A stretch of 64,000 nt of DNA, from positions 42,222,001 through 42,286,000 of the forward strand of contig NC_079173.1 in assembly GCF_947568905.1 (NCBI RefSeq). Reading direction: 5' to 3'. This stretch comes from Ostrea edulis. Its lineage: Eukaryota. Made by a program: the position numbers and the translations under genes. This document shows, piece after piece, positions 17,201 to 61,894 of this stretch; positions within the stretch are counted from its first letter, which is position 1; every line of letters begins with the position of its first letter. The notes below the pieces were generated by a model. The model had not been told where the DNA came from. It saw only the letters and a program-made list of their open reading frames with translations, and ran no database searches.

Positions 17201-20200
17201 TTTACAGTAGCATCTCGATAGTCTCACATTTACAGTAACATCTCGATAGTCTCACATTTACAGTAGCATCTCGATAGTCTCACATTTACAGTAACATCTC
17301 GATAGTCTCACATTTACAGTAACATCTCGATAGTCTCACATTTACAGTAAAGTCTCGATAGTCTCACATTTACAGTAAAGTTTCAGTAGACTTACTTTTT
17401 CAGTGAAGTCTCAATAGAGTCTCGCATTTACAGTAAAAACTACACAGAAACTCACATTTACAGTAAAGTCTCAATAAAATCTCGCAATTACAGTGAAATC
17501 TTAACAGAGTCTCACATTTACAGTAAAAAATTTATAGAAACTCGTATTTATATTAAAATTGCTACAGTAAAGATTTCATAGAGTGTCAATTTATGTATAG
17601 CAGAGTCTCATGGATCTCGGATGAGTAAGTCACTTTTTGAATTGGTAATATACTGCCTTGGTTTGATAGTGCTAAGACGATTAAGAACATTGTCTCTGTG
17701 AATGAGGAGCTCACTGCTGAGGAATGGAAGAAGAGATACGAGAAAGAAAAAGAGAAGGCCGCCCGATACAAAGGACTACTAGAAAAGTGCCAAGCTGAAC
17801 TCCAAATGTGGAGAGCCGGTAAGTTTCCATGTTTCAACAACAAAACACAGGGTTGTACAGCCTAGTCTTGATCTGTATTGTGACCCAGGTGAGTGGTGTT
17901 ATATGAAGATGCAAGAAACAAATTTTCAAAGCATTTGGTTTGCACATATACTTCCTATAATGAATCTAATGTATATAATTAGTTGTGTCTTTCATATGAA
18001 TGATCGTGATATTATTATGGTGGGCAACAATTGATGATGAAAGAAACTTGATTTCTTTTCCCAGGATTATAAGTGTTTTTATTTTTCATAGATCAGAGTA
18101 ATCATTGATTTGATAGTTAAACTATGTGACACCAAATATAAACTTACAGTTTCTACCTGAGAGTTTTATTCCCTGCCCAAAATTCATGTTTGTTGCAAAA
18201 GCAGAAAGTGTTAACGTCACATCACATATACTTAGGGCTATTCCAGAAATGATCAAATGGGGGGGTTGGGCGGCAAACGATATTTTTTTGTATGGGTGGT
18301 CGTATTTTTTCATATTTTAATTGGTCCGTGGTTGGACTGTTAAAAAAATATTTATTATGGGTAGTGGGTAGTTTCTATTGTTTTTTAATTTTGTGCCACA
18401 TGGGTGTTGAGTTTTCAGAATATTTTTATTGTCACTCTTGTCGTGTTGGTTACAAAACGTCGGAGGGAAAATTGAGAACGTGCTTTCGAAATCGGAAGTA
18501 ACATAGAACTATTTGAGTTGTCGCTCTTTGCAGCGCATAACTTTCCATTACAGCACTCTTCAAATTAGAGGCGCGTTTAGTAGGGTCCCTTTGGACGTGA
18601 TGGCGGCGAACTCTGTTCTGTAGATTATTACAGTTTACAGTGCATCGATTTTGGGAATATTTTGAAACCAATAGGTATTCTGTTTTCTAATAAAAATAGG
18701 CAAACCTTAGTTGATTTATACGAGGGTACCGATCCGTTATATTTATCAGTCGGTGTGATGGTGATATAGAGGCCTCTGGGCGCGGGCTCCATTAGAAGAC
18801 GAACGATTCGTGGAAAAACATATCCATATCCATTTCATGATAATAGCATCGTTTGGACTCCCAATCTTTCCAACATTCCCGCCATAGATGCCTTTGATTG
18901 TTGATGTGACATCGTTTCTTCAGAACTACTGTGATACAATGTCGCACAGGCATTACCGCGTCATTGACTAGAATGTTTGTCCCGAAAACCTCGCGAGATT
19001 TGTACCATTTTCATTTTCAAAAATATTTTTGTGATGGGTCTGGTTAGTTTTTTTTTTTTATTAGATGGGTCATTGTAAAATGAGTTGATTAATTTGATGG
19101 GTCATGGGGTAATTTTTTTTTTTTTTTTATGGGTGCTTGGTTTATACAAAAGGTGCCTCCCGACCCCCCCATGTATTTATTTCTGGAATAACCCTTATTA
19201 CAGTACTGGCATTATGTTGTTCATGTGTAGGTCAAGCCGTGTCGGTGGATGAACAAGTGGACATGAAAGCCAGCACCGCCTCGCTACAGGAAGAGGAGAA
19301 ACCACCACAGCCAGCCATGACAGCCAGCGTCAGTTCCACAGTCGACGAAAACACCAAGGCGCAGTTTGAGGAGGAGAAACTGAAGCTGTATGCACAGCTG
19401 GATGACAAGGTCAGTTGTTAATGCCCTGGATGATTGTGGTCACACTTCTCTATATAATAAGACATGTATGGTTAAGATGGTAACGTGTCTGTAGATAATA
19501 CTTGTCAATGGGTGATGAAGTAGGACGTGTATGGATGATAGGGTAACGTGTCTGTAAATTATACGATAAGAGCTAGGCCTATTTTCTATCTATCATGTAG
19601 GGCTGAAACGACACGCCCCCTTCAAGATACGATACATGTTGCAATACTTATGCCACGATTCAATACTTTCAATATGATACATTTTATAGAAGAAATATTT
19701 AATTACCAAGATTCACAATCATAATTTTAAAAGCGAAATGTTTCCAAACTGCTGAACAGTAAGATGTCTATTGGCTTTGTTGTTTAAACTGTTAAAGTTC
19801 TTTATTATTTTCATCAGACTCATGGCTAACAACAGTCTGATCGTTATTTGATGCTATTTTGTCCCTCGTGCAAATAAAAATAATAAGTACAGACCGAGTA
19901 TTTTACTGATGTATTTTACTGAACCTGTTTGTAATATACATGTACGTATCAAACTGAAAATCAAGGCAATGAATTGAACATTGAATCGAGCGTTTATATT
20001 GAACAGTATTGATATTTCGGTGAATCGTTTCAAACCTACTATTATGGAGATAGACCTAGTTGTATTCTAGTTGCTGTCTATGATGGAGATGGATTTAGTT
20101 GCCTATAATGGGGAGGGGACGTGATGCTGTTGATGATTAGAAAGGGACCTTGTCATTGTCTATGATAAGAGAGGGACCCTGATTTGCCATTGAGGAACTA

Positions 20201-23200
20201 TTCTTTCATTTCATTGATAAGAACTCAAATTATTTTTCCCAATGATTGAACAATAATGTTCCGCACAATAAGAAATAAAGTCGCAGTTGCTTTGTTAAGA
20301 TTTTGGTTTTGTTATAAAACTCTAGTACAGCACACTTTCATTTTGTGTTCTTGTTTTTCAGGATGAGGAAATAAACGAGCTATCACAGATGATAGAGAGA
20401 TTGAAGGAACAAATGCTGGAGCAGGAGGAGCTGATTACGATGGGGAAGCGAGATTACGAGAACATGCAGCAGGACATGGCTCGGATACAGGCGGACAACG
20501 ACTCCGCCAAGGATGAGGTAACGTTTCCTCTCCTAGCAAACAAACATTTCCTCTCTCAGCAAACAAACATTTCCTCTCTCAGCAAACAAACATTTCCTCT
20601 CCTTGTAAACAAACATTTCCTCTCTCAGCAAACAAACATTTCCTCTTGTAGTAAACAAACCAAACAAACATTTCCTCTTGTAGCAAACAAACATTTCCTC
20701 TCCTAGCAAACAAACATTTCCTCTCTCAGCAAACAAACATTTCCTCTCTCAGCAAACAAACATTTCCTCTTGTAGCAAACAAACTTTTCCTCTCTCAGCA
20801 AACAAACATTTCCCCTCCTATAGAACAAACATTTCCTCTTGTAGTGTTCAAACAAGCATTTCTTTTCCTAGAGAACAAACAATTATCTTCTAATTAATAA
20901 ACATTTCCTTTTGTAGTGAACAAACATTTCCTCTCCTAGCCAAGAAGCATTTCCTCTCCTAGCAAACAAACATTTCCTCTCCAAGGGAACAAACATTTCC
21001 TCTCCTAGCATACAAACATTTCTTTGTGAACTACATTTCCTCTCATAGTGAACAAATATATCCTCTCTCAGCAAGCAAACATTTCCTTTAACAGCCAACA
21101 GACATTTTCTCTCTCAGCAAACAAGTATTTCCACTCCTATTGAACAAAGATTTCCTCGTGTAGTGTTCAAACAAGAATTTCCTCTCCTAGCGAAGAAACT
21201 TTTCCTCTTCTAATAAACAAACATTTCCTCTTCTAGTGAACAAACATAAATTTTCTTGTAGTGAACAAACATTTCCTCTCTCAGCCAAGTGAGATAACAT
21301 ATTCTCTCCTAGTCAAAAAACATTTCCTTTCCTAGTCAACAAACACTAATCCTCTCACCCTGAACAAACATTTATTCTGTGAAGGCAAATTGTATTCATG
21401 CACAGGTTGAGAAGGGGTTTAATTTTCCAATTCTTTTAAGAGAGACATGAATTATCCTGACAATGGGGCTGTGCAGTGGTTATGATATTCTCTTTAATGC
21501 CTCTGGGATTCAATGCTCTGATAGTGGAAGGTTGTAACGAACATGGGAGTGTGGAGAAGGGGGGTAGGGGGCTGTTTCGTGTCATAGTTGGGAGATTGTG
21601 TCCCACATAAAAGACCCCTTTACTTTCATATCCAGTGAGAGACATTGAAAGGAATTTTTATGCCGGCAGTACAGTAAAACACATGTACAGTGGAGTGCTG
21701 GGGATGAACGAGTCGTAATCTCATTAAATCCACTCTATGTTCTGTAACTACAGGGAATGAAAATCACTTCATTATAAGCATGAATTTATTATGAGCCTGT
21801 TTGCTGTAACTGTGTTTGACTGTAGACAAGATTTAGTTTGGGTTATCTATCACTCTGTCTTGAGGTCTCTATCTCACATAGTTCTACTCTGTCTTGAGGT
21901 CTCTATCTCACATAGTTCTACTCTGTCTTGAGGTCTCTATCTCACATAGTTCTACTCTGTCTTGAGGTCCCTATCTCACATAGTTCTACTTCTGTCTTGA
22001 GGTATCTATCTCACATAGTTCTACTCTGTCTTGAGGTCTCTGTCTCACATAGTTCTACTGTCTTGAGGTCTCTATCTCACATAGTTCTACTCTGTCTTGA
22101 GGTCTCTATCTCACATAGTTCTACTCTGTCTTGAGGTCTCTGTCTCACATAGTTCTACTGTCTTGAGGTCTCTATCTCACATAGTTCTACTCTGTCTTGA
22201 GGTCTCTGTCTCACATAGTTCTACTTCTGTCTTGAGGTCTCTATCTCACATAGTTCTACTCTGTCTTGAGGTCCCTATCTCACATAGTTCTACTGTCTTG
22301 AGGTCCCTATCTCACATAGTTCTACTCTGTCTTGAGGTCTCTGTCTCACATAGTTCTACTCTGTCTTGAGGTCCCTATCTCACATAGTTCTACTCTGTCT
22401 TGAGGTATCTATCTCACATAGTTCTACTCTGTCTTGAGGTCCCAATCTCACATAGTTCTACTGTCTTGAGGTCTCTATCTCACTTAGTTCTACTCTGTCT
22501 TGAGGTCCCAATCTCACATAGTTCTACTGTCTTGAGGTCTCTATCTCACTTAGTTCTACTCTGTCTTGAGGTCCCAATCTCACATAGTTCTACTGTCTTG
22601 AGGTCCCAATCTCACATAGTTCTACTCTGTCTTGAGGTCTCTATCTCACATATTTCTGGAGATAGAGACTTCATATTTGGTGAACTGAGAGTTGAAAGTC
22701 AATGCTGCATGATTAAGGTCATTTATCAAGGTCAGATTTGCATCCATCAGTGGCGGCAAGGCTTTGGAGGCTTAATGATATTTCTCAGTTTTACAGAGAG
22801 AATTTGACGCTGAAATTTTTTTTATCAGTATTTTTTTTTTTTTTTTGAAAACTAGGTTGAAGTTAAAGGAAAACTGTAAATGGGATGATTTAATGAAGTG
22901 CTGCGATTTGTTGATGTTCAATGATCTCTGTATTTATAGGTTAAGGAGGTCTTACAAGCCCTGGAGGAATTGGCTATGAATTACGATCAGAAGTCACAGG
23001 AAGTGGAGAACAAGAACAAAGAAAACGAGACCATTGTGGAAGAACTCAACCAGAAGCTGGTACATGTGCACCAAGACTTGTCAGATTTAATCCAACTGTA
23101 AAGCAGTCTGGTATCACATGACTGATGTAGATGTCTGGTATCACATGACTGATGTAGATGTGTAGTATCACATGACTGAGGCTATATTTAGATCTAAAAC

Positions 23201-26200
23201 TTCAAAGTTATTTCAGATTTCAAACATTTCGGTTGAGCATCACTGAAGAGACATTATTTGTCGAAATGCGCATCTGATGCATCAAAATTGGTACCGTATA
23301 AGTTTTACATTATGACTGATGTAGATGTCTGGTATCACATGACTGACGTAGATGTCTGGTATCACATGACTGATGAGGTTTTTACGTTGGCTAAGTGTTA
23401 GACTGAGTGTATTTGGTGGTTACTTTTTGATGCCATATTTGAAGACGTTTCACACATCTTTATACGCAGAACAAATTGAACAAGGTTTAGGAGTTTGTTG
23501 TAGATTTTATCATGTTTATCTTTATTGAATTGATTTGTTTGGTATTAAGGAGAAATTCAGGGAAATTTTGACTATTTACAGAGCGAGCTGGAGAATATTA
23601 AGGCTGAGTTCGAGAAGATGAAGGACTCGTCTCTTCATCAGAGGAAGAAGATGACAGAGGTCATGGGCAGTCTGATGAAAGATATGTCAGAGATAGGGAG
23701 CATTGTGGGAGGAACCGCTAACGAATTCAAGGTATGGATTTGTCATAGGGGAAATAGATAGTTTAACAATTCAGTGTGAGGACTATAGATATCCAGCGGA
23801 GGTGAAATATCTTTCTTTATACTGGTCTTCTGTTTAGTTTCCCTTGTTCTCTTTTCAGTTTAGCGGAGTTACTACAGACAAAATGGAGGAGGATTACACA
23901 GTGGCCCGCATTTACATCACCAAGATAAAGAGTGACATTAAGACTATAGTATCGCGGTCGCAGCAGCTAGAAGTGACCGAGACTGAGGTCAAGGAGAAGC
24001 TTGGCCACGCCGTGAAAGATCTCAGTGACTGCAAGCTGACCATACAACAGGTATATCGACTGGGTAGTTTACAATTTAACAAGCTGACCATACAACAGTT
24101 ATATTGACTGGGTAGTTTACAACCTGACAAGCTGACATACCACAGTTATATTGACTAGTTTACAATCTGACAAGCTGACTATACAACAGTTATTTATATT
24201 GACTGGGTAGTTTACAACCTGACCATACCACAGTTATATTGACTGTGTAGTTTACAACCTGACAAGCTGACTATATAACAGTTATATTGACTGGGTAGTT
24301 TACAATCTGACAAGCTGACCATACAACAGTTATATTGACTGGGTAGCTTACAATCTGACAAGCTGACTATACAACAGTTATATTGACTGGGTAGTTTACA
24401 ATCTGACAAACTGACCATACAACAGTTATATTGACTGGGTAGCTTACAATCTAACAAGCTGACTATACAACAGTTATATTGACTGGGTAGTTTACAATCT
24501 GACAAGCTGACCATACAACAGTTATATTGACTGGGTAGCTTACATGCTGACTATACAACAGTTATATTGACTGGGTAGCTTACATGCTGACTATACAACA
24601 GTTATATTGACTGGGTAGTTTACCATTTAACAAGCTGACTATACAACAGTTATTTATATTGACTGTGTAGTTTACAATCTGACAAGCTGACTATACAACA
24701 GTTATATCAACTGGGTAGTTTACAATCTGACAAGCTGACCATACAACAGTTATATTAACTGGGTAGCTTACAATCTGACAAGCTGACTATACAACAGTTA
24801 TATTGACTGGGTAGCTTACATGCTGACTATACAACAGTTATATTGACTGGGTAGTTTACCATTTAACAAGCTGACTATACAACAGTTATTTATATTGACT
24901 GTGTAGTTTACAATCTGACAAGCTGATTATACAACAGTTATATCAACTGGGTAGTTTACCATTTAACAAGCTGACTATACAACAGTTATTTATATTGACT
25001 GTGTAGTTTACAATTTAACAAGCTGACCATACAACAGTTATATCGACTGGGTAGTTTACAATCTGACTATACAACAGTTATATCGACTGGGTAGTTTACA
25101 ATTTAACAAGCTGACCATACAACAGTTATATTGACTGGGTAGCTTACAATCTAACAAGCTGACCATACAACAGTTATATTGACTTGAGTAGCTTACAATC
25201 TGACAAGCTGACCATACCACAGTTATATCGACTGGGTAGCTTACAATCTAATAAGCTGACCATACCACAGTTATATTGACTGTGTAGTTTACAATCTAAT
25301 AAGCTGACTATACAACAGTTATATTGACTGTGTAGTTTACAATCTAATAAGCTGACCATACCACAGTTATATCGACTGGGTAGCTTACAATCTAACAAGC
25401 TGACCACGCAACAGTTATATTGACTGGGTAGCTTACATGCTGACCATACAACAGTTATATTGACTGGGTATCTTACAATCTGACAATCTCTGTAGTAATG
25501 TGCAGTTTGTTTGTTCGACATTGGTCAAACCAATGCCTCTCTTATCAATGGGGTTGCTATTCAGCTGTGCCATATGACGACAATTGTTGGTTCAAATATA
25601 AATAGATTGTTGGGTTGACATAAATAAATGAAGGGACAAGATAAAAATCGATGTCGTACTAAAAACTAAAGACCCCCCTCCCCCTCCCTCCCCCCCCCCC
25701 CCCCCTTCTTTTAAAATCTAAATATGATTGTTGATTCCCCCCTCCCCAAATAAAGGAGCATATTGGTTTGCACCTGTGGGTTAGTAGAGGAAATATCTGC
25801 TCCGTGTGAGATAAGAACCCCTTTGCTTGACAGACATCAAACTTGTAATACTGGTTTTCTCTATAAAGTAGATTACACCTACTGATTTTGAGGACATACA
25901 GTCTTATGGAAGATATTGTCTGCAAACAGTCAAGGGTCAATATACTTTAGACAGGAGAAGATTTTGTCCTCACAGTCTAGGGTCACTCTACTTTAGACAA
26001 AGGAAGATATTGTCTGCGCAATGTCTGAAGAACCCTTTGCTACACTAGTTCTATCTAAGGTTTAGATGACCTCTGTTAATTCTTAGGCAGGTCAAGGGTC
26101 AAACTGGACATGGTAAGTTATTGTTTGCTCAGTATCTTGAGAACCCTTTCTTGACAGACATCAATATTGATACACTGGTTCTGCCTAAGAAGTAGATGTT

Positions 26201-29200
26201 CATTGTTGATTTTGAGGTCAGAAGGTTGAATGAAGGTTAGGGGTCAAACTGGACATGGTAAGTTATTGTCTGCTCAGTATCTTGTGAACCCTTTGATGAC
26301 GGACATCAAACTTGGTACCCCCAAAAGATTAGATGACCTTGTTGGTTTTCAAATCCCAAGATCAAGGTCATGACTCAGTTGACAGAAACTTGAGAGATAA
26401 GACTTAGTATTGTGGTTGGTCCTAATTAGTGAATTAATTCATATTTTTCACTATCAAACCTCATTACAGATGATTGGAATTTGAAGTTGACCCTTTTTAA
26501 TATTGCCACAGTGGGAGAAGGAGGAGGCAAATGTGTTTCTGAAACATTTCTTTTTATTCTGCTTATTCACAAAATTAATGCTCAGTTTCTGTATCTCACT
26601 TTCAATGACATAAAGAAGTTTATTTTTTCAACAACAACAAAAACTAATGATGTAATATCATGTGATCAAAGGCACACAACAGACATTAATGAAATTTAAC
26701 CCCCCCCCCCCTCCCAACTATTTGAATCAAGATTTATCCAGCATCAACCATTTGATCTTGCCCCTAAATCAGTAATTTAGATATTATTTTAGTGAGTAGT
26801 GTCAAAAGAAATAATTGGTTGAAAAATAATAGAAAGAAATAATTGGGTTTAGATCTTAGAAACCAATATATGTCTCCTTTTGAATTCGAAACATATTATC
26901 CTTTGTAAGGCTTTCAAACTGATCATCTCCTCTGATAAGCATATAATCCAAGATATTAGAGACATGGTCTTCTGTAGTTAAGTATGTGTTCAAACTGCTA
27001 GATTTACAAGTATATATGTATAGTAGTTCATGAGGGAGAACTGCGAAGTATGGGAGACATTCATCTGTGTTTTCTTGTCTGCAGTATGAAGCCAAGATGT
27101 CGACACTCAATGAGACAATAAAAGACATTGACAGCAAGAAGAAGCAGCTGCAGGAGAATGTCGACAATCTCAACGATCAGGTGGAGATGTTGAAGATGGA
27201 AGGTACGAATGTGTTAGTGGCAATCGCTTAATGATCAGGTAGAGATAATCACTTAACGATCAGGTGGAGATAATCGCTTAACGATCAGGTGGAGATGTTG
27301 AAGATGGAAGGTACGGATGTGTTAGGGGTAATCACTTAATGATCAGGTGGAGATAATCACTTAACAATCAGGTAGAGATAATCACTTAACAATCAGGTGG
27401 AGATAATCGCGTAACGATCAGGTGGAGATAATCGCTTAACGATCAGGTGGAGATAATCACTTAACAATCAGGTGGAGATAGTCACTTAACGATCAGGTGG
27501 AAATGTTGAAGATGGAAGGTACGGATGTGTTAGGGGTAATCACTTAATGATCAGGTTGAGATAATCACTTAACAATCAGGTGGAGATAATCGCTTAACGA
27601 TCAGGTGGAGATAATCGCTTAACGATCAGGTGGAGATAATCACTTAACAATCAGGTGGAGATGTTGAAGATTGAAGGTACGGATGTGTTAGGGGGAATCC
27701 TATGTCAGATCTTCACAGGAAGGAAGGAATCTTATAACAGAGCTCTTTTTTAGCTCTTCTGAGCCAAAGGCTCAAAGAGCTAATGCTATGGCCATTTGTG
27801 CGGTGTGCGTAAACTTTTTAGAAAAAGGTCTATAACTCAAGAACCCCTTGGCCAATTTTTTTCAAATTTGTTACAGGGTATCATTGGCCCAAGGGCTTTC
27901 ATACATACTAAATAGAGGGATGTGACCCTTTAACAAGGGGAGATAATCAGGAAAATACAAACAAAAGTAGTGGTTGCTAAAAAATCTTCTCAAGAACCAC
28001 AGGGCAGATTATCACCAAACTTACACATAAGGATGAGGATATGTTGTAGATTAAAAATTGTTCAAGGCATTACCCTGGGGCAAAGGGTGTGGTCTCAAGG
28101 TCACTTCAAAGTTGACCTAAATTTATAAATTTTTTAAATTCCTTAAATCTTAGATATTTTAGTCATTATAAGGACTAGGATCATCAAATTTTGACAATTG
28201 ATGCATCTTAGGACCTTGTGTCAAGTTGTCTCAAAAGTAGGTCACGGTGACCTACTTTTTGAATTTTGCAGGTATTTATTTTAAAATTAATTTTGATGCA
28301 TATCTTGGACACTTTGAAGCCTATGATCATCAAAACTTGTCAGTTGGTGGATCATGGGACCTTGAAATGCGTCAACTGAAAAATAGGTCACCGTGACCTA
28401 CTTTCTGAATTTTATGGCTTATCATTTATAGATATATTTTAAGTTGTTATTTCAAATACCAAGAGGTTTAGAATCATCAAATCTTGTAAGTTGATGCATC
28501 TTGAGGCCTTGAAACATATTTATAAAAAAGTAGGTCACAGTGACCTACTTTTTGAATTTTACAGATATTCAAATTTCACATTTTCAATTTTAGATGCATA
28601 TTTTGGGCACTATAAAACCTAGGATCATCAAACTTTGTCAGTTGATGCGTCTTCAGTCTTCGGTTTGTGTCGACCAAAAAGTAGGTCACCGTGACCTACT
28701 TTTGGCATTTGACAGTTATATTTATATATTTCAGTCACTAATTGACCTACAATCATCAAACTTTGGCAGTTGATGCATCTTGAGTCTACGGAGTGTGTCG
28801 ACCAAAAAGCAGGTCACCTTGACCTACTTTTGGAATTGGACACCTATATTTATATATTTCAGATACTATTTGACCTACAGTCATCAAGCTTTGTCAGTTG
28901 ATGGGTCTTGCATGTTCGAAGGGTTTCGACCAAAAAGTACTTTTGGAATTGGACACCTATATTTATATATTTCAGATACTATTTGACCTACAGTCATCAA
29001 ACTTTGTCAGTTGATGGGTCTTTCATGTTCGGAGTTCGCTGACCAAAAAGTAGGTCACCATGACCTACAATTGGAATTTGACAGCTATATTTCAATATTC
29101 AGATACTAATTGGCTTAAAATCATCAAACTTTGTCAGTTGATATTTCTTGGGTTCTCAAAATGTGTAAACCAAAAAGTAGGTCACATTGACCTACTTTTT

Positions 29201-32200
29201 TGAATTCTTAGGATTTAACTAAAGATTTAGAATACTAAGAGGCTAAGAATAGAAATGGTGGGGTTGTACAATTTATCAGAAGAGCGATTCTAGGCCCTTG
29301 GGCCTCTTGTTATGAATTGATTTGAGATGATAGAGTTTTCATTGATTTTAAAATATTTTTTGTAATACAATATTCAACTTTGTTTAATTTACATTTTTGC
29401 ACACTAAGAGTGTTATGAAAATGTATTGCTATTGATATGTTGAATCTTGATTTGGAGAAAACTTAATGTGTTTAGAAATGCAAGTAAAGAATCAAAGGCG
29501 TGAATAAATGCATGTTCCAAACCTTTCAGGCCTTTGATTTTTATCTTTCATTTCCATGTGATGTATGTAGCACAAGCATTTCAGGCCTTTGATTATGTAT
29601 TGGGTTTTTTTTCTTGTGAACAGAGAAAATGCACTTGAGCTCTGTCTCGGAGCGTGAGAAGGAGGCATCAGACCGTGTCCAGAATATTTCAGCCATGAAG
29701 GAATCTCTGGAGAAACAAATGGAACAACACAGAGAGCAACACGCCAAGAATCTCGCTGAGCTCCGCGAGGAGGTGGCCGACAAACAGAGTCTCATTGACC
29801 AGCTCAAAGAGTACGTATCTCATAAAACAGCTCAAAGATTGTGTATCTCATAGACCAGCTCATAGACACAGTATGTATCTGATACACCAGCTCAGAGTCT
29901 GTATCTCATAGAACAGCTCAGAGTCTGTATCTCATAGAACAGCTCAGAGTCTGTATCTCATAGAACAGCTCAGAGTCTGTATCTCATAGAACAGCTCAGA
30001 GTCTGTATCTCATAGAACAGCTCAGAGTATGTATCTCATAGAACAGCTCAGAGTATGTATCTCATAGAACAGCTCAGAGTCTGTATCTCATAGAACAGCT
30101 CAGAGTATGTATCTCATAGACAGCTCAAAGAGTATGTATCTCATAGACCAGCTCAAAGACACAGTATGTATCTGATACACCAGCTCAGAGTCTGTATCTC
30201 ATAGAACAGCTCAGAGTCTGTATCTCATAGAACAGCTCAGAGTCTGTATCTCATAGAACAGCTCAGAGTATGTATCTCGTAAACAGCTCAAAGAGTATGT
30301 ATCTCATAGACCAGCTCAAAGAGTATATATCTCATAGACCAGCTCAGAGTATGTATCTCATAGACAGCTCAAAGAGTCTGTATCTCATTAACCATTAGAG
30401 GTGATGTTGAAGACTGAAGCTTGTTTGGTTTCACTTGGTCTCATGGGGTCTTGCGACAGGCAGGTGCCCTATAGTGGCCTGTGTGTGCATTCAAATGCTT
30501 TTCCTGACTTTATTTTGGCTATCCTTGCAGCTATTAAATTGAAAATTTATACATGAACTTGTTGCATTAATGTGTTTCATACCAAGTTTGAGTTTTGGCT
30601 TTACTGACCTATTTTTGAAAGAGTTATGGACCTTGACCTTAGCAAATGAAGCCGCAAAAAGTGTTTATATGTAACATATTCATATAATGTTTGTAGTATT
30701 TTAGAAGTATTGTCAAAGAATTTTAGATGTGGATATTATGAAGAATCATTTAAAACTTCAACCTTATTTTATAGTACAAACCAAAAACTGAGTTTGGCTT
30801 TGGAGAAACTTCAGGCTGATTATGACAAATTGAAGACAGAGGAGACTGAAAAATCACAGAAACTACAGGAGCTGTCATTACAAATAGATCGCCGTGAGCA
30901 GGCAAAGCAGGACCTCAAAGGCCTCGAGGAGACAGTGGTAAGTAAATTACAGGAGCTCACCATGAGCAGGCAAAGCAGGACCTCAAAAGGCCTCGAGGAG
31001 ATGGGTAAGTAAACTATAGGAACTGTCACTACAAATAGATCGCTGTGAGCAGGCAAAGTAGGACCTCAAAGGCCTCGAGGAGACAGTATTAAGTAAACAA
31101 CACAAGCTCACTGTGAGCAGGCAAAGCAGGACCTCAAAGGCCTCGAGGAGACAAGTAAACTATAGGAGCTGTTGCTATAGCTACATGGTTGTGAGTAGGT
31201 GACGCAGGACCTCAAAAGTTGTCAGTAAATTATAGGGGCTGTTGCTATAGATACATGGTGGTGAGTAGGTGATGCAGGACCTCAAAGTCCTGGAGGAGAC
31301 AGTGGTAAGTTAACCACAAAAGTTGGCAGCTAAAGATTGATCATTATGAGCAAATCAATACAACAAGGAGATATAGGTAGGAAGACCATGAGAGGTGTCA
31401 CTAAGAATCGTTCATCATGAACAAGCAGAAGAGCACCTCAGGCCCTGCATCTCAGGTCCTTTGACAAGTTTCGGGGCCTTTCAACAAGTTTAGGTACACA
31501 AGTTATGAATAGGGGAAAATTTACGAATAGAAAAATAGGAAACTTAATGAATTTGTTTATGACAATCACACAAGTTTTCATTTTCCTTTTTCAGGCTAAA
31601 GAGTTACAGACCTTGCACAACTTACGCAAATTGTTTGTACAAGATTTACAGAATAGAGTGAAGAAGGTCAGTACAACTCAACGATCATAAAATGGCGTAG
31701 AATTAAGGAGGTTTGTCAGACATTGTCCATTCTGTGTATAATTAAGGAGGTTTGTTGGACATTGTCCATTCTGTGTATAATTAAGGAGAATTGTCTGGCA
31801 TTGTCCATTCTGTGTATAATTATGGAGGATTGTCTGGCATTGTCCATTCTGTGTGTTATTAAGGAGGAGTAATAGATAGGATTTTAAGTTGAAAATGAAG
31901 TGTACAAAAATATTGTAATTGAAAAGTTAACTTGAAAATTGACTGTGTTAAACTTTGGTAAAAATTTAATCAGAATTCATAGATTTTTATGGGGAAAAAA
32001 TAATAAAGGCAACCATTGATAATGACAGATGAGTGTGTTATTACAGTCAGCCAGTGGGAAGTCTGTCAAATATGTTTTGTGATAATCTGCCAATAAAATA
32101 TCCATAGTATTACATTATTTTAATACACTAAGCCAATAAGAAGGCCTATTACATTTATCTTGTTACAGTCAGCCAATAAGAAGGCCTATTACGTTTATTC

Positions 32201-50433: not shown

Positions 50434-50724
50434 TTTACATGTATTACATAGGTAGTGTGAAGAACAAAGCGTGTTTAATGTCATCGAAACAGTGTTTCTA
50501 TTATTGTAGATATTTCATGCTGGAAAATTTAACAGGAATAACGAGTTAGGCGAGATAAACGCACGCTTCGTGACTTCACTCAAAACAAAACTGACAACGC
50601 GAGATCTCGTTAGACAAACGAATAATCACTTTGATGGCGATATGAAACCAAGAAAAGGATGTAATTTTTAGAGAGGCATCCAGATCTGTGGCAGATGTCA
50701 ATTAAGAACGAGAAATGATTACAA

Positions 50725-51072
50725 TTAGTTTCTGTTGTTTTTCTTTAGAGGCCAAAACCTGTCGTTCCAGTTTTGATAATAAGATCTTAATGGATTTTTC
50801 GTATCTTGAAATCCGTTTATGTCAGCATCACCAAAACTTCTCTTTTCGAACAGAGTCCTCCAGTCTACAAAGCGGTTGTAATGGTGACCCCCATGGAAGA
50901 AATTCTTTCCCGTGTTGAATCGTAGTCGTTTGTTGACCGTAGTTAACAGATTTGGTAGTTCCATGTTTGAAGAGATGGAAAGGGGATTGTCTTCAAACAC
51001 TGAATTCTTCCCGTATACGTCGTGAATCAAAGCACAAAGTAACGAAGCAAACAACAGGATCCGCGCCTTCAT
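50725..51072 (-). CDS. Secreted neuropeptide/prohormone-like precursor, 115 aa, family unassigned
   Basis: MKARILLFASLLCALIHDVYG (signal-peptide-like) KNSVF...TTVN-KR-LRFNTGKNFFHGGHHYNRFVDWRTLFE-KR-SFGDADINGFQDTKNPLRSYYQNWNDRFWPL-KK-NNRN*. The ATG lies 5 nt after a polypyrimidine/ttacag acceptor (exon starts 51077). Confidence 0.8.
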   Translation of the reverse strand: MKARILLFASLLCALIHDVYGKNSVFEDNPLSISSNMELPNLLTTVNKRLRFNTGKNFFHGGHHYNRFVDWRTLFEKRSFGDADINGFQDTKNPLRSYYQNWNDRFWPLKKNNRN

Positions 51073-51124
51073 TGTGTCTGTAAAAGAAAGCAGTTGAGTA
51101 GAAAATGCAAGAAAATTCGCTGTA

Positions 51125-51655
51125 TTTGTGAATATAAGCGTGTTCACTGTCACTGTGTTTTATTGTAAGTGTGAATTCATTGTAAGCGTGTTCGCTATAA
51201 CCATGATTGACTGTAAGTGTTTTAAAATTCGTTATAAGCATGTTCACTGTAACCGTGTTTTACTGTAAGTGTGAATTCATTATAAGTGTGTTCACTGTAA
51301 CCATATTTTATTGTAAGTGTTAATTCGTTATACATTGTAAGCATGTTCGCTGTAACCTTGTTTCACTGTAAGTGTGGATTTATTATAAGTGTGTTCACTG
51401 TAATTGTGTTTTATTGTAAGTGTGAATTCATTATAAACGTGTTCACTATAACCGTGTTTTACTGTAAGCGTGAATTCATTACAAGCGTGTTCATTATAAT
51501 CATGTATTACTGTAAGTGTTAATTCATTATAAGTGTATTCGCAGTAACCATGTTTTACTGTAAGCGTGAATTCATTATAAGTTTGTTCACTATAACCATG
51601 TTTTACTGTAAGCGTGAATTCATTATAAGCGTGTTCGCTGTAACCATGTTTTAGT
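51125..51655. repeat. 48-bp minisatellite x ~11 next to the precursor-gene acceptor
   Basis: tgtaagtgtgaattcattataagcgtgttcactgtaaccgtgttttac. Confidence 0.9.
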
Positions 51656-51767
51656 GTATTAGTTTTTCAAACTACTAAGGTAAATCATATACAATAGTGG
51701 TAAACCATAAAATGGTCTATAAACATATGGAAGTTTCTACTAGAGCAAACCAAATTACAATGTTAAT

Positions 51768-52050
51768 GGCCGCGTTAAACCTAAGACGTAACCATAGGTA
51801 GTGATTGCTCTTTTGCCAAACCCTCGGCATCAGAGGTGAGAATCACGGGTCTTTCGTATATGACCTTAAAAAATGGAGGCCTCGTTTCGCGGCAGGCGTT
51901 GACACGTTATTAAAGAACCCTCACTGCTACGACCCTGAACACTAAGCATAGGTCTAAATTTGTGGTCCTTCACCTACAGCGGGTGACGTCTCAATATGAG
52001 TGAAGAATTCTCGACTGAGCGTAAAAGAAATAAAAAAAAATCAACCAACC
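51768..52050 (+). mobile_element. Degenerate SINE (44725 family)
   Basis: aaagaaccctcactgct..ggtgacgtctcaatatgagtgaagaattctcga body. Confidence 0.65.
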
Positions 52051-53015
52051 CTTCCATTAACTGATTATTCATCTTTGAAAATAGCCCTCGTTGTATCTCC
52101 CTGACAACCCCAGAAATTATGACGGGAAGATTTCATTAACCTCTATTTTTAAACATGTCTAATATTGAACAAGCAGGATGTCAATCGAGGAGCAGCACGC
52201 GGACCAAACATCCTTAATTTTGTTCTTGATTGAAATTTGTCAGGGCATCCGGACTCAATTAATCCGATGTTTAATTAACTTTGGCCGACAGGAATTATTA
52301 CGTAACAAAACGGCTTCCGGAACTTTTAAAATTTCCTGTTTTGAAACAAATGAACGTGCCGATATGGTTTTAATGTGTCATTGCTCTTTGATAGATTACG
52401 GACATTTAAAGTTCATACTGGAAGAAATCAGCTCATTGTTAATCAAGGAACTTTAAAGTATACAGAAATCTGATTTAAAAGAATTAAATACAGACCCTCG
52501 TTATCTCTGGTTTAGAGAACAAATTAATCCTAATACCACGACAAATGTGGTCAAAAACCTGATTAATTCTCCTACATCTCCTTGGAGTTCATTATTTGGA
52601 GATGTTGAAATAAGTCCTTCTTAAATCTGAAGTTACACTGTCCTCCCACCTAGATACGCCTACTATCAACATGTAGTTGATGACGCCAGAAGCACGCGCC
52701 ATCTGGTGTTTATAAACAGCAGCTTTGACATAGTAAAAGGTGAGGTGGTGAAAATAGAATAAATGTCATATTCATAATCCTGTGCTTTTGGTGTTGATTG
52801 AATAAATTAATGAAATTATTACATAAAAATTCACTAATACCCATTTTAGTTCTGGAATTCCATCGTCATCAAAAGCAGATTATTTTGACTTGCCTAGATG
52901 ATCGAGCATGCAGTCTGGGGGGGGGGGGGGGGGGGGGGGGGGCAGTATAAGAGAGAACTTACATGTATACTGCCTCGCTAGAGAGCTAGCTTTTCTAGTG
53001 ATGTGGTAGAGTGTA

Positions 53016-53075: not shown

Positions 53076-53504
53076 TACACGTTACACTAGTTTGATATGC
53101 TCGGTTCATTTGACTATATCATGTCACATTACGTTTGGCTCCAATCGGATCTCACCCGTCCTTTTCCGTAACCGAAAATATTTGCTCTTACGGAAGTGAC
53201 CGAGTAATTACGATTGGTTTGGCGCCTCTATCTCCGCGTCATATGAAATTCATATTTTCTTTTCAATTATTCATCAACTGAGTTTAACTAAACTAAATCA
53301 TAATAAACGCAATTTCTACTCATTTTGAACTACATAAAGTAGGGGCGGTGTACTCGCAGTTATCTAAACCTCTTAGCGGTTTGTACATGTAATGTGCAAA
53401 TTTTCCGAATTTCGTATAAGACGAGTAGAAATTGATTTCATTCCTTAATTAGACGCCACCTTGGAGTTACCTGAGAAGGAATTAGATGCTGGACATTGAA
53501 CGTC

Positions 53505-54300
53505 GCATTCTGTATTTGCTACAGTCTATTTTTGCCACAGTTTTATATTTGCCAGTCTATATTTGCCACACATCCTGTATTTGCCACAGTCTGCATTTGC
53601 CATAGTCTATATTTGCCACAGTCTGTATTTGCCATAGTCTATATTTGCCACAGTCTGCATGTCTATATTTACAACAGTCTGTATTTGCCACAGTCTATAT
53701 TTGCCGCAGTCTAAAATTGCCACAGTCTAAATTTGCCACAGTCTATGTTTGTCACAATCTGTCTGTATTTCACACACAGTTTATATTTGCCACAGTCTAT
53801 ATTTGCCACAGTCTGTATGTCTGTATTTGTCACGCAGTCTATATTTGCCACAGTCTGTATTTGCCATAGTCTGCATGTCCATATTTGCCACAGTCTGTAT
53901 TTGCCACAGTCTATATTTACCACAGTCTGTATTTGCCATAGTCTATATTTGCCAGTCTGCATGTCTATATTTACCACAGTCTATATTTGCCATCATCTAT
54001 ATTTGCCACAGTCCGTATGTCTGTATTTGCCACAGTCTATATTAGCCACAGTCTAAATTTGCCACAGTCTATGTTTGCCACAATCTGTCTGTATTTGCCA
54101 CACATTCTGTACTTTCCACAGTCTATATTTGCCACAGTCTATATTTGCCACAGTCTATATTTGCCACACAGTCTGTATTTTCCACAGTCTATATTTGCCA
54201 CAGTCTATATTTACCACAGTCTGTATTTGCCACACAGTCCATATTTGCCACAGTCTATATTTGCCACGCAGTCTGTATTTTCCACAGCCTGTATTTGCCG
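53505..54300. repeat. 16-bp-based minisatellite
   Basis: atatttgccacagtct. Confidence 0.9.
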
Positions 54301-54984
54301 TTTGATTTACCTGTTTTATTTGCTTTACCATTAGGTTTACCCCTGAATAATGTTAGTGACGTTTATTAGATATACATGCACCCAGCATTTCTCAGTTCCC
54401 TTCAATAAGCATATGAACATTTATTGCGAAAAAAAAAAAGAGAAAAGAAAACTGACGCATTGAAATCGTTATCAGGTTTTGCAGCACATTCTTGAAAATC
54501 AATCCCCATTGTGCAGACCGAAAGCAGCGAAACCGCTCCCCTTAGATTGTCGACAATTACCAATGATTGATAGTATCCCCTCCCCATCATCAGTACTGTA
54601 AAATAAGGCTATATTCGTATATCACAGCACAACATACAACTCTCTATAAATAAAATCCATGATTTAGCAAAGCTGTTTAAACTGATTCGGATTGCTGGGG
54701 AGATAAATTTAGATTAAGCAATTCTAAGCTTCTGAAAACCGCATTGGCTTCTCTCGACCTTGAGAATCCGGGAATCTTATCGTCATCAACACAAAATTGA
54801 TTTCACTGAGCCATGGATTCATAACACGAGTAACAAAGCTAATTAAAATGTACATGAGTTTGCAGTTACGCTAGTCTTTAATTAAGGGAGTGCATGAGAA
54901 TGACGTCACGTATGAACTTCAGGAGGAAGAGAAGCACACTATTATCTGGAGTTTTGTAAGCATGTGTTGATTTTCACATAAGTC

Positions 54985-55340
54985 GGTTCAACCGGGCAAT
55001 AAATCGGTGTAGGTCGGCTCAACCGGGCAATAAATCGGTGTAGGTCGGCTAAACATTGTGATAAATTGGTGTAGGTCGGCTAAACATTGCAATAAATTGG
55101 TGTAGGTCGGCTAAACATTGCAATGAACCGGTGTTGGTCGACTAAACATTGCAATGAATTGGTGTAGGTCGGCTTAACCGGGCAATAAATTGGTGTAGGT
55201 CGGCTAAACATTGCAATAAATTGGTGTAGGTCGGCTAAACATTGCAATAAACCGGTGTAGGTCGGCTAAACATTGCAATGAATTGGTGTAGGTCGACTCA
55301 ACCGGGCAATAAATCGGTGTAGGTCGGCTCAGCCAGGCAA
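54985..55340. repeat. 31-bp minisatellite x ~11
   Basis: ggtgtaggtcggctaaacattgcaataaatt. Confidence 0.92.
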
Positions 55341-55759
55341 TAAACCGGTGGACCTATTTTAGTTTGTTGTCGGGTATCCTTGCCTTATGTTTGAGGGTTT
55401 TTTTATTTGAGCGATCAAAATTTGAATTAAATCCCAAACTTAAATCTAAGTCTCGATTTCATTTTCTCTCTCGAGATTTTCAGGCCCAGGATTCAAATAG
55501 ATTCGCACTTCAGTTTTGTAGTATTGTCAATTTTCTTGGAAATATGTTTTTAATGTCTACATGTAAGGGGGATTATAAAACTAAAACCGAAGAACTGGGA
55601 TCATAGCGCTTACTTGTTATTGAGTTATAGTGTATTAAACTCTCGACCTTTTTGAAATTACGATTTATATTTATTTCTTCATATGTGTACGCTCATGTGC
55701 TACCCTGTTAGGTCATAGCTATAGATAAAGGTCGCATTATCAATACAGAGGTGATATCG

Positions 55760-56690
55760 CATGGCTATTGTTTTAATATTAAGTGATATCGCATGACTAT
55801 TGTTTTAATATTAACTGATATCGCATGGCTATTGTTTTAATATTAGGTGATATCGCATGACTATCGTTATACTATAAGGTAATATCGCATGACTATTGTT
55901 CTGATATAATGTGATATCGCATGACTATTGTTATAATGTAAATGTGATATCGCATGACTCTTGTTATAATATAAGGTGATATCGCATGTCTATTGTTATG
56001 ATATAAAGGTGATATCGCATATCTATTGTTATGATATAAAGTGACATCGCATGTCTATTGTTATGGTATAAAGTGATATCGCATGTCTATTGTTATGGTA
56101 TAAAGTGATATCGCATGTCTATTGTTATGATATAAAGTGACATCGCATGTCTATTGTTCTGCTATAAAGTGACATCGCATGTCTATTGTTATGGTATAAA
56201 GTGTTATCGCATGTCTGTTGTTATGATATAAAGTGATATCACATGTCTATTGTTATGATATAAAGTGATATCGCATGGCTATTGTTGTGATAGAAAGTGA
56301 TATCGTATGTCTATTGTTCTGCTATAAAGTGATATCGCATGTCTATTGTTATGGTATAAAGTGATATTGCATGTCTATTGTTCAGCTATAAAGTGATATC
56401 GCATGTCTATTGTTATGATATAAAGTGATATCGCATGTCTGTTGTTATGGTATAAAGTGATATCGCATGTCTATTGTTATGATATAAAGTGATATCGCAT
56501 GACTATTGTTATGATATAAGGTGATATCGCATGTCTATTGTTATGATATAAAGTGATATCGCATGTCTATTGTTATGGTATAAAGTGATATCGCATGTCT
56601 ATTGTTATGATATAAAGTGATATCGCATGTCTATTGTTATGATATAAGGTGATATCGCATGTCTATTGTTATGATATAAGGTGATATCGC
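55760..56690. repeat. 32-bp minisatellite x ~29
   Basis: gtgatatcgcatgtctattgttatgatataaa. Confidence 0.93.
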
Positions 56691-59914: not shown

Positions 59915-61370
59915 ACTGTTCTCACGGATATCGACATTTAACCACTCAAAGTAAATACCATTCTCACGGATATAGATATTTAACCACGCAAACTAAACAC
60001 CATTCTCACGGATATCGACATTTAACCACGCAAAGCAAATACCATTCTCACGGATATCGACATTTAACCACGCAAAGTAAATACCATTCTCACGGATATC
60101 GACATTTAACCACGCAAACTAAACACCGTTCTCACGGATATTGACATTTAACCACGCAAAGTAAATACCATTCTCACAGATATCGACATTTAACCACGCA
60201 AAGCAAATACCATTCTCAGGGATATCGACATTTAACCACGCAAAGTAAATACCATTCTCACGGATATCAACATTTAACCACGCAAACTAAACACCGTTCT
60301 CACGGATATCGACATTTAACCACACAAACTAAACACCATTCTCACGGATATCGACATTTAACCACTCAAACTAAACACCGTTCTCACGGATATCGACATT
60401 TAACCACGCAAACTAAACACCATTCTCACGGATATCGACATTTAACCATGCACACTAAACACCGTTCTCAGGGATATCGACATTTAAGCACGCAAACTAA
60501 ACACCATCCTCACGGATATCGACATTTAACCATGCACACTAAACACCATTCTCATGGATATCGACATCTAACCACGAAAACTAAACACCATTCTCACAGA
60601 TATCGACATTTAACCACGCAAAGCAAATACCATTCTCACGGATATCGACATTTAACCACCCAAAGTAAATATCATTCTCACAGATATCGACATTTAACCA
60701 CGCAAAGCAAATACCATTCTCACGGATATCGACATTTAACCACGCAAACTAAACACCGTTCTCACGGATATCGACATTTAACCACACAAACTAAACACAA
60801 TTCTCACGGATATCGACATTTAACCACTCAAACTAAACACCGTTCTCACGAATATAGACATTTAACCATGCACACTAAACACCATTCTCAGGGATATCGA
60901 CATTTAATCACGCAAACTAAACACTGTTCACGCGGATATCGACATTTAACCACGCAAACTAAACACCATTCTCACGGATATCGACATCTAACCACGCAAA
61001 CTAAACACCGTTCTCACGGATATCGACATTTAACCACGCAAACTAAACACCGTTCTCACGGATATCGACATTTAACCACTCAAACTAAACACCATTCTCA
61101 CGGATATCGACATTTAACCACGCAAACTAAACACCATTCTCACGGATATCGACATTTAACCACGCAAACTAAACACCGTTCTCACGGATATCGACATTTA
61201 ACCACGCAAACTAAACACCATTCTCACGGATATCGACATTTAACCACGCAAACTAAACACCGTTCTCACGGATATCGACATTTAACCATGCACACTAAAC
61301 ACCATTCTCAGGGATATCGACATTTAAGCACGCAAACTAAACACCGTTCTCACGGATATCGACATTCACC
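59915..61370. repeat. 42-bp minisatellite x ~35
   Basis: cattctcacggatatcgacatttaaccacgcaaactaaacac; produces the 331-aa repetitive ORF. Confidence 0.95.
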
Positions 61371-61894
61371 TAACAACACAGTATTTTTACTTGTTACCAA
61401 TTTATTTTTTAAATCCCAGATTAGGTATCAAAATGCATCATAGTGTTAAAACTAGTTTCATAACATTGTGACATTCATGATAAATTCAGTGTCGACACAA
61501 ACGGATTTTGGCAATAGCAATACCAAGAACGACAAACGCACTGGTCTTCCAGTCTTCTAAACACGCGTCATTTTCCTCTGCTAACAATTCAAAGACGCGT
61601 GAGTTCCCACTGCTAACAATTCAAAGACGCATTAGTTCCCACTGCTAACAATTCAAAGACACGTGGGTTTTCACTGTTAGCAATTCAAATACGGGTGAGT
61701 TCTCACTGCTAACAATTCAAAGACGCATTAGTTCCCACTGCTAACAATTCAAAGACATGTATCCACATGTTTCAGACCCCCCCCCCCCCAAAAAAAAATA
61801 GTAATGATTTTGAAAAAACCTGCTTCTTTATCAATTTGTTCATAACGAAATACCATACAGAGAAGCAAGCAGACGAGTTAAATGGATAGAAATC

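What the first reader, a model, noticed from the sequence alone, without database searches (positions are those of the whole stretch)
50725..51077. Orphan neuropeptide-like precursor convergent with kinesin-1
Seen in sequence: a strong acceptor, then ATG 5 nt later and a single-exon 115-aa ORF. It has a hydrophobic N-terminus ending in VYG, two KR sites, a terminal KK and no Cys after the signal peptide. Predicted products are LRFNTGKNFFHGGHHYNRFVDWRTLFE (or amidated LRFNT via G-K) and SFGDADINGFQDTKNPLRSYYQNWNDRFWPL. The two share a weak C-terminal pattern Y-x-x-[FW]-x-D-x4-[FL] before the basic pair. Established: this layout is typical of prohormones. Inference: I cannot match it to a molluscan family I know. 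There are only faint echoes: RLRF as in bag-cell/caudodorsal-cell peptides, and an LSI motif as in ELH/CRF-like peptides. It may be an undescribed signalling peptide, or a His/aromatic-rich host-defence peptide.
Basis: partly seen in the sequence, partly recalled or inferred. Interest (0 to 1): 0.75.

Follow-up and report, generated by a model that had tools for sequence, protein, structure and literature searches.

The report
Flat-oyster copy of RTLFamide neuropeptide gene
The small open reading frame is a real, transcribed oyster gene for a secreted neuropeptide precursor, but it is the counterpart of the "RTLFamide" precursor already described in the Pacific oyster in 2021, so it is not a new kind of signalling peptide.

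Summary
On the minus strand, ATG 51072 to TAA 50725 encodes 115 aa, and an AG acceptor lies 5 nt upstream. The protein has a signal peptide, two KR sites and a terminal KK.

The gene is real. Transcriptome-like contigs of a roughly 3%-diverged relative cover 50456-51077 and stop exactly at the acceptor. dN/dS against a 76%-identical relative is 0.27 overall and 0.06 over the predicted peptides.

It is not an orphan. A search of 1.84 billion proteins finds Magallana (Crassostrea) gigas K1RCX4 (E 2.6e-17). That protein contains, letter for letter, the peptides found by mass spectrometry and assigned to "Cragi-RTLFamide" by Réalis-Doyelle et al. 2021 (PMC8398477). They report expression mainly in visceral ganglia, mantle and larvae.

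The prohormone reading is therefore right, but "undescribed" is wrong.

One modest difference remains. The Gly that gives the C-terminal amide in Crassostrea (RTLF-G-KR) is Glu here (RTLF-E-KR). The same holds in two close relatives, so the peptide should end as a free acid.

The proposed amidated LRFNT and the internal repeat are not supported. The genome is very probably Ostrea edulis. This is a new member of a known family, of low interest.

The parts
51078..51095 (-). Polypyrimidine tract and AG splice acceptor (AG at 51079-51078), at the end of the intron that precedes the coding exon
   Evidence: Sequence. Contigs of organism A stop aligning exactly at 51077 and carry 25-39 further unaligned letters (table 8, records 1 and 9). 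The same acceptor-just-before-ATG layout is seen in C. gigas genomic contig L004 and in the distant locus L003.
50456..51077 (-). Last exon, the only coding one: 5 nt of 5'UTR, the CDS, and about 269 nt of 3'UTR
   Evidence: Extent of the contigs from X1 (50505-51077) and X2 (50456-51077). RNA-seq contigs X3 and X4, with no differences, lie at 50518-50680.
50725..51072 (-). CDS, 115 codons plus TAA
51010..51072 (-). Signal peptide, residues 1-21 (MKAR / ILLFASLLCALI / HDVYG). Predicted cleavage is VYG|K.
   Evidence: Hydropathy. The -3/-1 rule (V, G) comes from established knowledge. In the alignment the site sits next to the N-terminus (ARNSQF...) of the C. gigas propeptide seen by mass spectrometry. 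No SignalP run was possible.
50932..51009 (-). N-terminal propeptide, residues 22-47 (KNSVF...TTVN), weakly constrained
   Evidence: dN/dS is 0.77 against L001. It corresponds to the C. gigas peptide ARNSQF...TVD detected by mass spectrometry.
50926..50931 (-). Dibasic site KR (residues 48-49)
   Evidence: Invariant in all six aligned sequences
50845..50925 (-). RTLF peptide, residues 50-76 (27 aa, LRFN...FVDWRTLFE). It ends in Glu (GAA 50847-50845) where Crassostrea has the amidation Gly.
   Evidence: Aligned to the C. gigas 24-aa RTLF-amide peptide seen by mass spectrometry. The last 16 residues have dN/dS 0.05. Gly versus Glu is tabulated.
50839..50844 (-). Dibasic site KR (residues 77-78)
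   Evidence: Invariant
50746..50838 (-). Second peptide, residues 79-109 (31 aa, SFGD...YYQNWNDRFWPL). A single Arg (R96) may split it into 18 + 13 aa.
   Evidence: Aligned to C. gigas SFGGPDKIGFHNMESPFK(SYYQNWRERFFPK); both forms were seen by mass spectrometry. dN/dS is 0.08. YQNW is invariant.
50728..50745 (-). KK site (residues 110-111) and short C-terminal tail NNRN
50474..50479 (-). Probable poly(A) signal ATTAAA, 18 nt before the end of the X2 contig at 50456. A second AATAAA lies at 50433-50428.
   Evidence: positions; contig end. That it acts as the poly(A) signal is inferred.

Best explanation
This is the flat-oyster (very probably Ostrea edulis) orthologue of the mollusc RTLFamide neuropeptide precursor gene. 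A non-coding first exon lies further upstream and was not located. It is spliced to one coding exon (51077 to about 50456, minus strand).

The 115-aa preproprotein is inferred to enter the secretory pathway through a 21-residue signal peptide. Prohormone convertases are inferred to cut it at KR48-49, KR77-78 and KK110-111, and possibly at the single R96. Carboxypeptidase then trims the basic residues. The expected products are:
- an N-terminal propeptide of 26 aa;
- the 27-aa peptide LRFN...FVDWRTLFE;
- the 31-aa peptide SFGD...YYQNWNDRFWPL, or its 18-aa and 13-aa halves.

By homology with C. gigas these are neuronal and mantle signalling peptides. Their receptor and physiological role are unknown. 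Unlike in Crassostrea, the RTLF peptide has no Gly before the KR, so it should carry a free C-terminal Glu and no amide.

Shown here: the ORF, the splice boundary, transcription in a close relative, homology, purifying selection concentrated on the peptides, and the missing Gly. Inferred: the signal cleavage site, the processing, neuronal expression in this species, and bioactivity.
For: Homology:
- phmmer over 1.84 billion representatives gives P0001 (76% identity, E 5e-45), P0002 (50%, E 2.6e-17) and P0004 (37%, E 2.8e-4).
- The P0002 cluster holds UniRef K1RCX4 of Magallana gigas. Pairwise BLASTP gives E 2e-28.

Identity with the described precursor:
- Three of the four peptides listed for Cragi-RTLFamide in Supplementary Table 2 of PMC8398477 are exact substrings of P0002/P0005. 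The fourth, the N-terminal propeptide, differs at one residue (LYRTVD against LYGTVD).
- The paper reports expression mainly in visceral ganglia, mantle and larvae.

Gene reality:
- Contigs from two runs of a relative about 3% diverged cover 50456/50505-51077 and break exactly at the AG acceptor. In those runs 52167-52757, 53349-55318 and other stretches have no coverage, which fits RNA rather than genomic DNA.
- RNA-seq contigs identical to the window lie in the 3'UTR.
- The gene is single-copy in its own genome.

Selection:
- dN/dS against L001 is 0.27 overall, 0.06 for residues 61-111 and 0.70 for residues 22-60.
- KR, KR, YQNW and the W and F of the RTLF motif (W-x-x-x-F) are invariant across six sequences.

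Gene structure:
- An acceptor directly before the ATG is conserved in L004 and L003.

Protein-language-model neighbours:
- These are mostly prohormones such as DH31, PDH, galanin, NPFF and tachykinin. This is a lead only.
Against: No tissue information for this species could be obtained, because run names are coded. X1 and X2 are only guessed to be RNA. The 3'UTR RNA-seq contigs (X3, X4) are unstranded and could in principle belong to a long kinesin 3'UTR. No peptide evidence exists for this species. Against the closest relative (organism A), 7 of 8 coding differences change an amino acid; six of these fall in residues 22-64 and one changes the last residue (N115K), after the KK site. That part of the protein is barely constrained. 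The name-giving amide is absent. The first exon and the promoter were not found.
Confidence: 0.88

Rival explanations
1. It is a secreted peptide with a mainly non-neuronal role, such as a host-defence or mantle/shell-related peptide. The ganglion signal in C. gigas would then be secondary.
For: The C. gigas orthologue is also expressed in mantle and larvae. Peptide 1 is rich in His and aromatic residues and mildly cationic, +2. No receptor or bioactivity is known for any family member.
Against: The C. gigas peptides were recovered from visceral-ganglion extracts, and the transcript is 'mainly' in visceral ganglia. Peptide 2 is anionic and is the best conserved part. This is unlike linear cationic antimicrobial peptides, whose mature parts usually evolve fast (general knowledge). 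The layout of dibasic sites with conserved peptides and a variable spacer is that of a prohormone.
Confidence: 0.08
2. It is a non-coding or decaying locus in this lineage. The transcript exists, but the ORF no longer yields functional peptides, and loss of the amidation Gly is a sign of decay.
For: NCBI files the C. gigas locus under an XR_ accession, the non-coding class (Supplementary Table 1 of PMC8398477). Gly is replaced by Glu at the amidation site. Seven of eight coding differences against organism A are non-synonymous.
Against: The ORF is intact in the window, in organism A and in P0001, and the only indel is in-frame. dN/dS is 0.06 over residues 61-111 with dS 0.82. All cleavage sites are kept. 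Mass spectrometry shows the C. gigas ORF is translated and processed.
Confidence: 0.03

Closest known systems
Cragi-RTLFamide precursor of Crassostrea (Magallana) gigas (Réalis-Doyelle et al. 2021, Mar Drugs 19:452, PMC8398477; UniRef K1RCX4; CGG_contig_04103; NCBI XR_902640.3)
   Same: The order of parts is the same: signal peptide, propeptide, KR, a peptide of about 25 aa ending in [FV/FM]DWRTLF, KR, a 31-aa peptide SFG...SYYQNW..RF.P, then a dibasic site and a short tail. In both, a single coding exon is preceded by an acceptor 5-6 nt before the ATG. Identity is 40% over the full length and 50% over the phmmer-aligned core.
   Different: RTLF is followed by Glu, not Gly, so no amide is expected. 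Peptide 1 is 27 aa rather than 24 aa, and its N-terminal half is different and His-rich. The propeptide is 10 residues shorter. Peptide 2 ends WPL-KK rather than FPK-KR/KK.
Lottia gigantea RTLFamide-related precursor (XM_009063916.1), cited in PMC8398477
   Same: According to the paper it is a related precursor whose corresponding peptide is also not amidated.
   Different: I could not fetch the sequence, so no direct comparison was made. The paper reports homology mainly at the N-terminus of the RTLF peptide. Within bivalves the C-terminal part is the more conserved.
Unnamed 120-127-aa proteins P0004 and P0019 from ENA assembly ERZ26168041 (locus L003)
   Same: The architecture is the same, with KR after the propeptide...RFMNWDDMF-KKR, and ...AYQNWRSKF. 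The acceptor lies directly before the ATG.
   Different: Identity is only 29-37%. The organism is unknown. There is no RTLF motif and no Gly. No kinesin gene lies within 10 kb.

Membership tests
RTLFamide neuropeptide precursor (mollusc-specific NPP, PMC8398477) | Significant sequence homology to the Cragi-RTLFamide precursor | tested here: met
   phmmer E 2.6e-17 against a library of 1.84 billion proteins. Pairwise BLASTP E 2e-28. The hit's cluster contains K1RCX4_MAGGI, whose sequence contains the published mass-spectrometry peptides.
RTLFamide neuropeptide precursor (mollusc-specific NPP, PMC8398477) | Precursor architecture: signal peptide, then three or four peptides separated by conserved dibasic sites | tested here: met
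   Alignment A1: K48, R49, K77, R78 and K110 are invariant. The N-terminus is hydrophobic.
RTLFamide neuropeptide precursor (mollusc-specific NPP, PMC8398477) | RTLF motif at the C-terminus of the first peptide | tested here: met
   DWRTLF is identical in the window, organism A, P0001 and C. gigas.
RTLFamide neuropeptide precursor (mollusc-specific NPP, PMC8398477) | Gly before the dibasic site, giving a C-terminal amide | tested here: not met
   The window, organism A and P0001 have RTLF-E-KR. All 16 Crassostrea-cluster proteins have RTLF-G-KR. The describing paper itself admits a non-amidated Lottia relative to the family. I therefore treat this as a variable feature, not an exclusion: the gene is an orthologue, but the peptide is not an 'amide'.
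RTLFamide neuropeptide precursor (mollusc-specific NPP, PMC8398477) | Expression in the nervous system (visceral ganglia) | not testable with these tools
   Transcript-like contigs exist, but tissue labels are coded.
RTLFamide neuropeptide precursor (mollusc-specific NPP, PMC8398477) | Mature peptides detectable by mass spectrometry | not testable with these tools
   This is known only for C. gigas. Predicted masses for this species are given.
Pfam-curated neuropeptide families (any) | Match to a curated profile | tested here: not met
   No Pfam family matches, even at E up to 10.

The most novel reading that the evidence does not exclude
In the Ostrea lineage the name-giving peptide has lost its amidation signal (Gly to Glu, one base) while staying under strong purifying selection. 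That would mean the C-terminal amide is dispensable for receptor activation. Alternatively, the truly bioactive, family-defining product may be the second peptide (SFG...YQNW...), which is the best conserved across bivalves. Amidation would then be a Crassostrea-specific gain, since the Lottia relative and L003 also lack it.
Probability: 0.45. Interest if true: 0.3.

Novelty: new member of a known kind. Interest (0 to 1): 0.2.

Why it matters
It matters mainly for annotation. Small two-exon neuropeptide genes such as this one are easily missed or filed as non-coding: NCBI lists the C. gigas orthologue under an XR_ accession. This locus gives the flat oyster its RTLFamide-family gene with exact coordinates and predicted peptide masses. 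The Gly/Glu difference offers a natural test of whether amidation matters for this still orphan peptide, whose receptor and function are unknown. It does not open a new class of signalling molecule.

Tried and rejected
- Pfam scan of the ORF found nothing.
- The word-indexed protein search found only P0001. The Crassostrea orthologue appeared only in the exhaustive phmmer search.
- P0003 (710 aa, E 5e-5, seven stretches) is a repetitive protein that matches only residues 16-63. I rejected it as a compositional hit.
- A metagenome scan with the family alignment returned 176 pattern matches, none confirmed by tblastn.
- A literature search for the window's own peptide strings found nothing relevant. 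The family surfaced only through the word 'RTLFamide', taken from the C. gigas motif.
- Synteny with kinesin-1 in the distant locus L003 was not seen within 10 kb. L004 is too short to test.
- The internal duplication of the two peptides is not significant.
- The ESM Atlas neighbours are prohormones, but recognition is below threshold (1907 against 2300), so I used them as a lead only.
- The 5' non-coding exon could not be located. The unaligned 25-39 letters of the relative's contigs were not displayed, and the region upstream is a 48-bp tandem array.
- No structure prediction was run, because a short processed precursor is not expected to have a stable fold.
- I ran no further search on the family's wider range, because the identification no longer depended on it.

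Full report
**What is there**

The finding's coordinates hold an ORF on the minus strand. ATG is at 51072-51070 and TAA at 50727-50725, giving 115 codons plus the stop. Read on the minus strand, the sequence upstream is ...ctttcttttacAG|acacaATG. This is a pyrimidine tract and an AG at 51079-51078, 5 nt before the start codon.

The protein begins MKAR, then ILLFASLLCALI, then HDVYG. The mean hydropathy of the hydrophobic run is 3.0. KR lies at residues 48-49 and 77-78, and KK at 110-111. The only Cys is inside the hydrophobic N-terminus.

On the plus strand there are kinesin-1 heavy chain exons. For example, 30770-31012 matches residues 736-798 of solved kinesin-1 heavy chain at E 1.3e-12.

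Length alone is weak evidence. The window has two stop-to-stop frames of at least 140 codons, against 0.56 expected in shuffles.

**Is it a real gene?**

Two runs of "organism A" are guessed to be RNA and are about 3% diverged from the window. Each holds one contig, 600 nt and 688 nt long, covering 50505-51077 and 50456-51077.

Both alignments end exactly at 51077, the first base after the AG. Both contigs continue for 25 and 39 letters that do not fit the window. This is what a spliced mRNA would show.

In the same runs 52167-52757, 53349-55318 and other stretches have no coverage. That fits a transcriptome better than genomic DNA.

Two small RNA-seq runs hold contigs identical to the window at 50518-50680, inside the 3'UTR. 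These contigs are unstranded, so a long kinesin 3'UTR cannot be formally excluded as their source.

An ATTAAA lies at 50479-50474 on the minus strand, 18 nt before the end of the X2 contig at 50456. The gene is single-copy in its 894.8-Mb genome.

**Relatives**

- Pfam gives nothing.
- The word-indexed search gave one hit, P0001. It is 76% identical and comes from a 906-nt JGI contig cut off inside the signal peptide.
- The exhaustive phmmer search of 1.84 billion representatives added P0002 (123 aa, 50% identity, E 2.6e-17) and P0004 (120 aa, 37%, E 2.8e-4). It also returned P0003, a repetitive 710-aa protein that I discard.
- The 90% cluster of P0002 has 58 members. One is UniRef K1RCX4, an "uncharacterized protein" of Magallana (Crassostrea) gigas.

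**Identification**

The C. gigas sequence ends its first peptide in ...FMDWRTLF-G-KR. Searching the literature for "RTLFamide" found one paper: Réalis-Doyelle et al. 2021, Mar Drugs 19:452 (PMC8398477).

The paper names "Cragi-RTLFamide" as a new mollusc-specific neuropeptide precursor. It reports the following:

- It is expressed mainly in visceral ganglia, mantle and larval stages.
- Only one related precursor is known, in Lottia gigantea, and that peptide is not amidated.

Supplementary Table 2 lists four peptides under that name:

- FNMDNRAFGEDDRFNHFMDWRTLF-amide
- SFGGPDKIGFHNMESPFK
- SFGGPDKIGFHNMESPFKSYYQNWRERFFPK
- ARNSQFKHLPVFPGFLNRPLSTSPHFDLQNLYRTVD

The first three are exact substrings of P0002/P0005. 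The fourth differs from them at one residue, R for G. P0002/K1RCX4 is therefore the Cragi-RTLFamide precursor, and the window's ORF is its orthologue. Pairwise BLASTP gives E 2e-28.

The alignment (A1) shows the same order of parts in all six sequences. The invariant positions include K48 R49, K77 R78, the W and F of the RTLF motif, the G-F of the second peptide, and Y-Q-N-W.

**Gene structure**

C. gigas genomic contigs read ...ctttttcAG|acgacaATG. The distant locus L003 reads ...ttttttttcAG|ATGgcaATG. An acceptor directly before the start codon, followed by a single coding exon, is therefore a conserved feature of the family.

**Selection**

I used Nei-Gojobori estimates against L001, with dS 0.59.

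| Region | dN/dS |
|---|---|
| Whole CDS | 0.27 |
| Residues 61-111 (end of peptide 1 plus peptide 2) | 0.06 |
| Residues 22-60 (propeptide plus start of peptide 1) | 0.70 |

Against the very close organism A there are 8 coding differences and one in-frame 3-nt insertion. Seven of the differences change an amino acid. Six of these fall in residues 22-64, and one changes the last residue (N115K), after the KK site. Peptide 2 is unchanged.

Tightly kept peptides and cleavage sites beside a loosely kept spacer are the usual pattern of a neuropeptide precursor.

**How it most likely works**

These steps are inferred from the architecture and from the C. gigas mass spectrometry.

1. The signal peptide is removed at VYG|K.
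2. Convertases cut after KR48-49, KR77-78 and KK110-111, and partly after the single R96. R96 sits where C. gigas has the K at which the 18-aa form ends.
3. Carboxypeptidase trims the basic residues.

The predicted products and their monoisotopic masses are as follows.

| Product | Length | Mass (Da) |
|---|---|---|
| Propeptide | 26 aa | 2875.43 |
| LRFN...RTLFE | 27 aa | 3394.66 |
| SFGD...FWPL | 31 aa | 3763.74 |
| First half of the 31-mer | 18 aa | 1993.95 |
| Second half of the 31-mer | 13 aa | 1787.81 |

The receptor and the physiological role are unknown for the whole family.

**What differs from the described member**

In all 16 Crassostrea-cluster proteins the RTLF is followed by Gly-Lys-Arg, the amidation signal. 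In the window, organism A and P0001 it is followed by Glu-Lys-Arg (GAA at 50847-50845). In P0004 and P0019 it is followed by Lys.

The flat-oyster peptide should therefore end in a free-acid Glu, yet its last 16 residues have dN/dS 0.05. Together with the non-amidated Lottia peptide reported in the paper, this hints that amidation is a Crassostrea trait. I could not test the direction of change.

- The "amidated LRFNT via G-K" product is not conserved: the site is TGN in organism A and NNN in P0001.
- The proposed shared pattern of the two peptides is not above chance. 4014 of 5000 shuffles reach the score, and its Asp is not kept in other species.
- A host-defence role is not favoured. The net charges are +2 and -1.5, the anionic peptide is the most conserved, and the orthologue's peptides come from ganglia.

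**Species**

The own-genome span is 894,786,893 bases. This equals the 894.8 Mb stated for the Ostrea edulis assembly in PMC10979132. With the 40-50% identity to C. gigas, this makes O. edulis very probable, but it is an inference.

**Verdict**

This is a new species member of a family known since 2021, with a small, possibly informative loss of the amidation site. Nothing here called for a referred step.

Noticed in passing
window 51133-51658: There is a 48-bp tandem array of 10.7 copies, 78% matching, directly upstream of the coding exon, inside the presumed intron. Contigs of organism A pile up on 51182-52166 at depths of hundreds to thousands with many internal joints. It therefore looks like a dispersed or expressed repeat family.
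   Followed up: partly
window 60448-61443 (+): This is the longest ORF of the window (331 aa). It is a run of 12-residue repeats (HGYRHLTTQTKH...) with no Pfam match. It is most likely a 36-nt minisatellite that happens to stay open, not a gene.
   Followed up: partly
window 53509-54299, 54996-55350, 55751-55999: Further tandem arrays with periods of 16/142, 31 and 32 nt lie between the neuropeptide gene and the next sequence upstream. A G26 homopolymer lies at 52917-52942.
   Followed up: no
C. gigas orthologue (L004:3127-3498; paper's Supplementary Table 1): NCBI lists the C. gigas RTLFamide locus under XR_902640.3, an accession class for non-coding RNA, although its peptides were found by mass spectrometry. 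The orthologue here may be missing from, or mislabelled in, gene sets in the same way.
   Followed up: no
window 19137-31012 (+): Coiled-coil stalk exons of kinesin-1 heavy chain lie in the ORFs at 19137-19421, 20389-20706, 29629-29853 and 30710-31012. Introns between them hold long tandem repeats, for example 22097-22807 and 24212-25521. Another note of this scan places a hammerhead ribozyme at 23233-23285. I did not examine it.
   Followed up: no
L003 (ENA ERZ26168041, contig ctg179528): This is a 31-kb low-coverage contig from an unidentified organism. It carries the most distant family member found (P0004/P0019...NWDDMF-KKR...AYQNWRSKF). Knowing its species would extend the family's known range.
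   Followed up: partly
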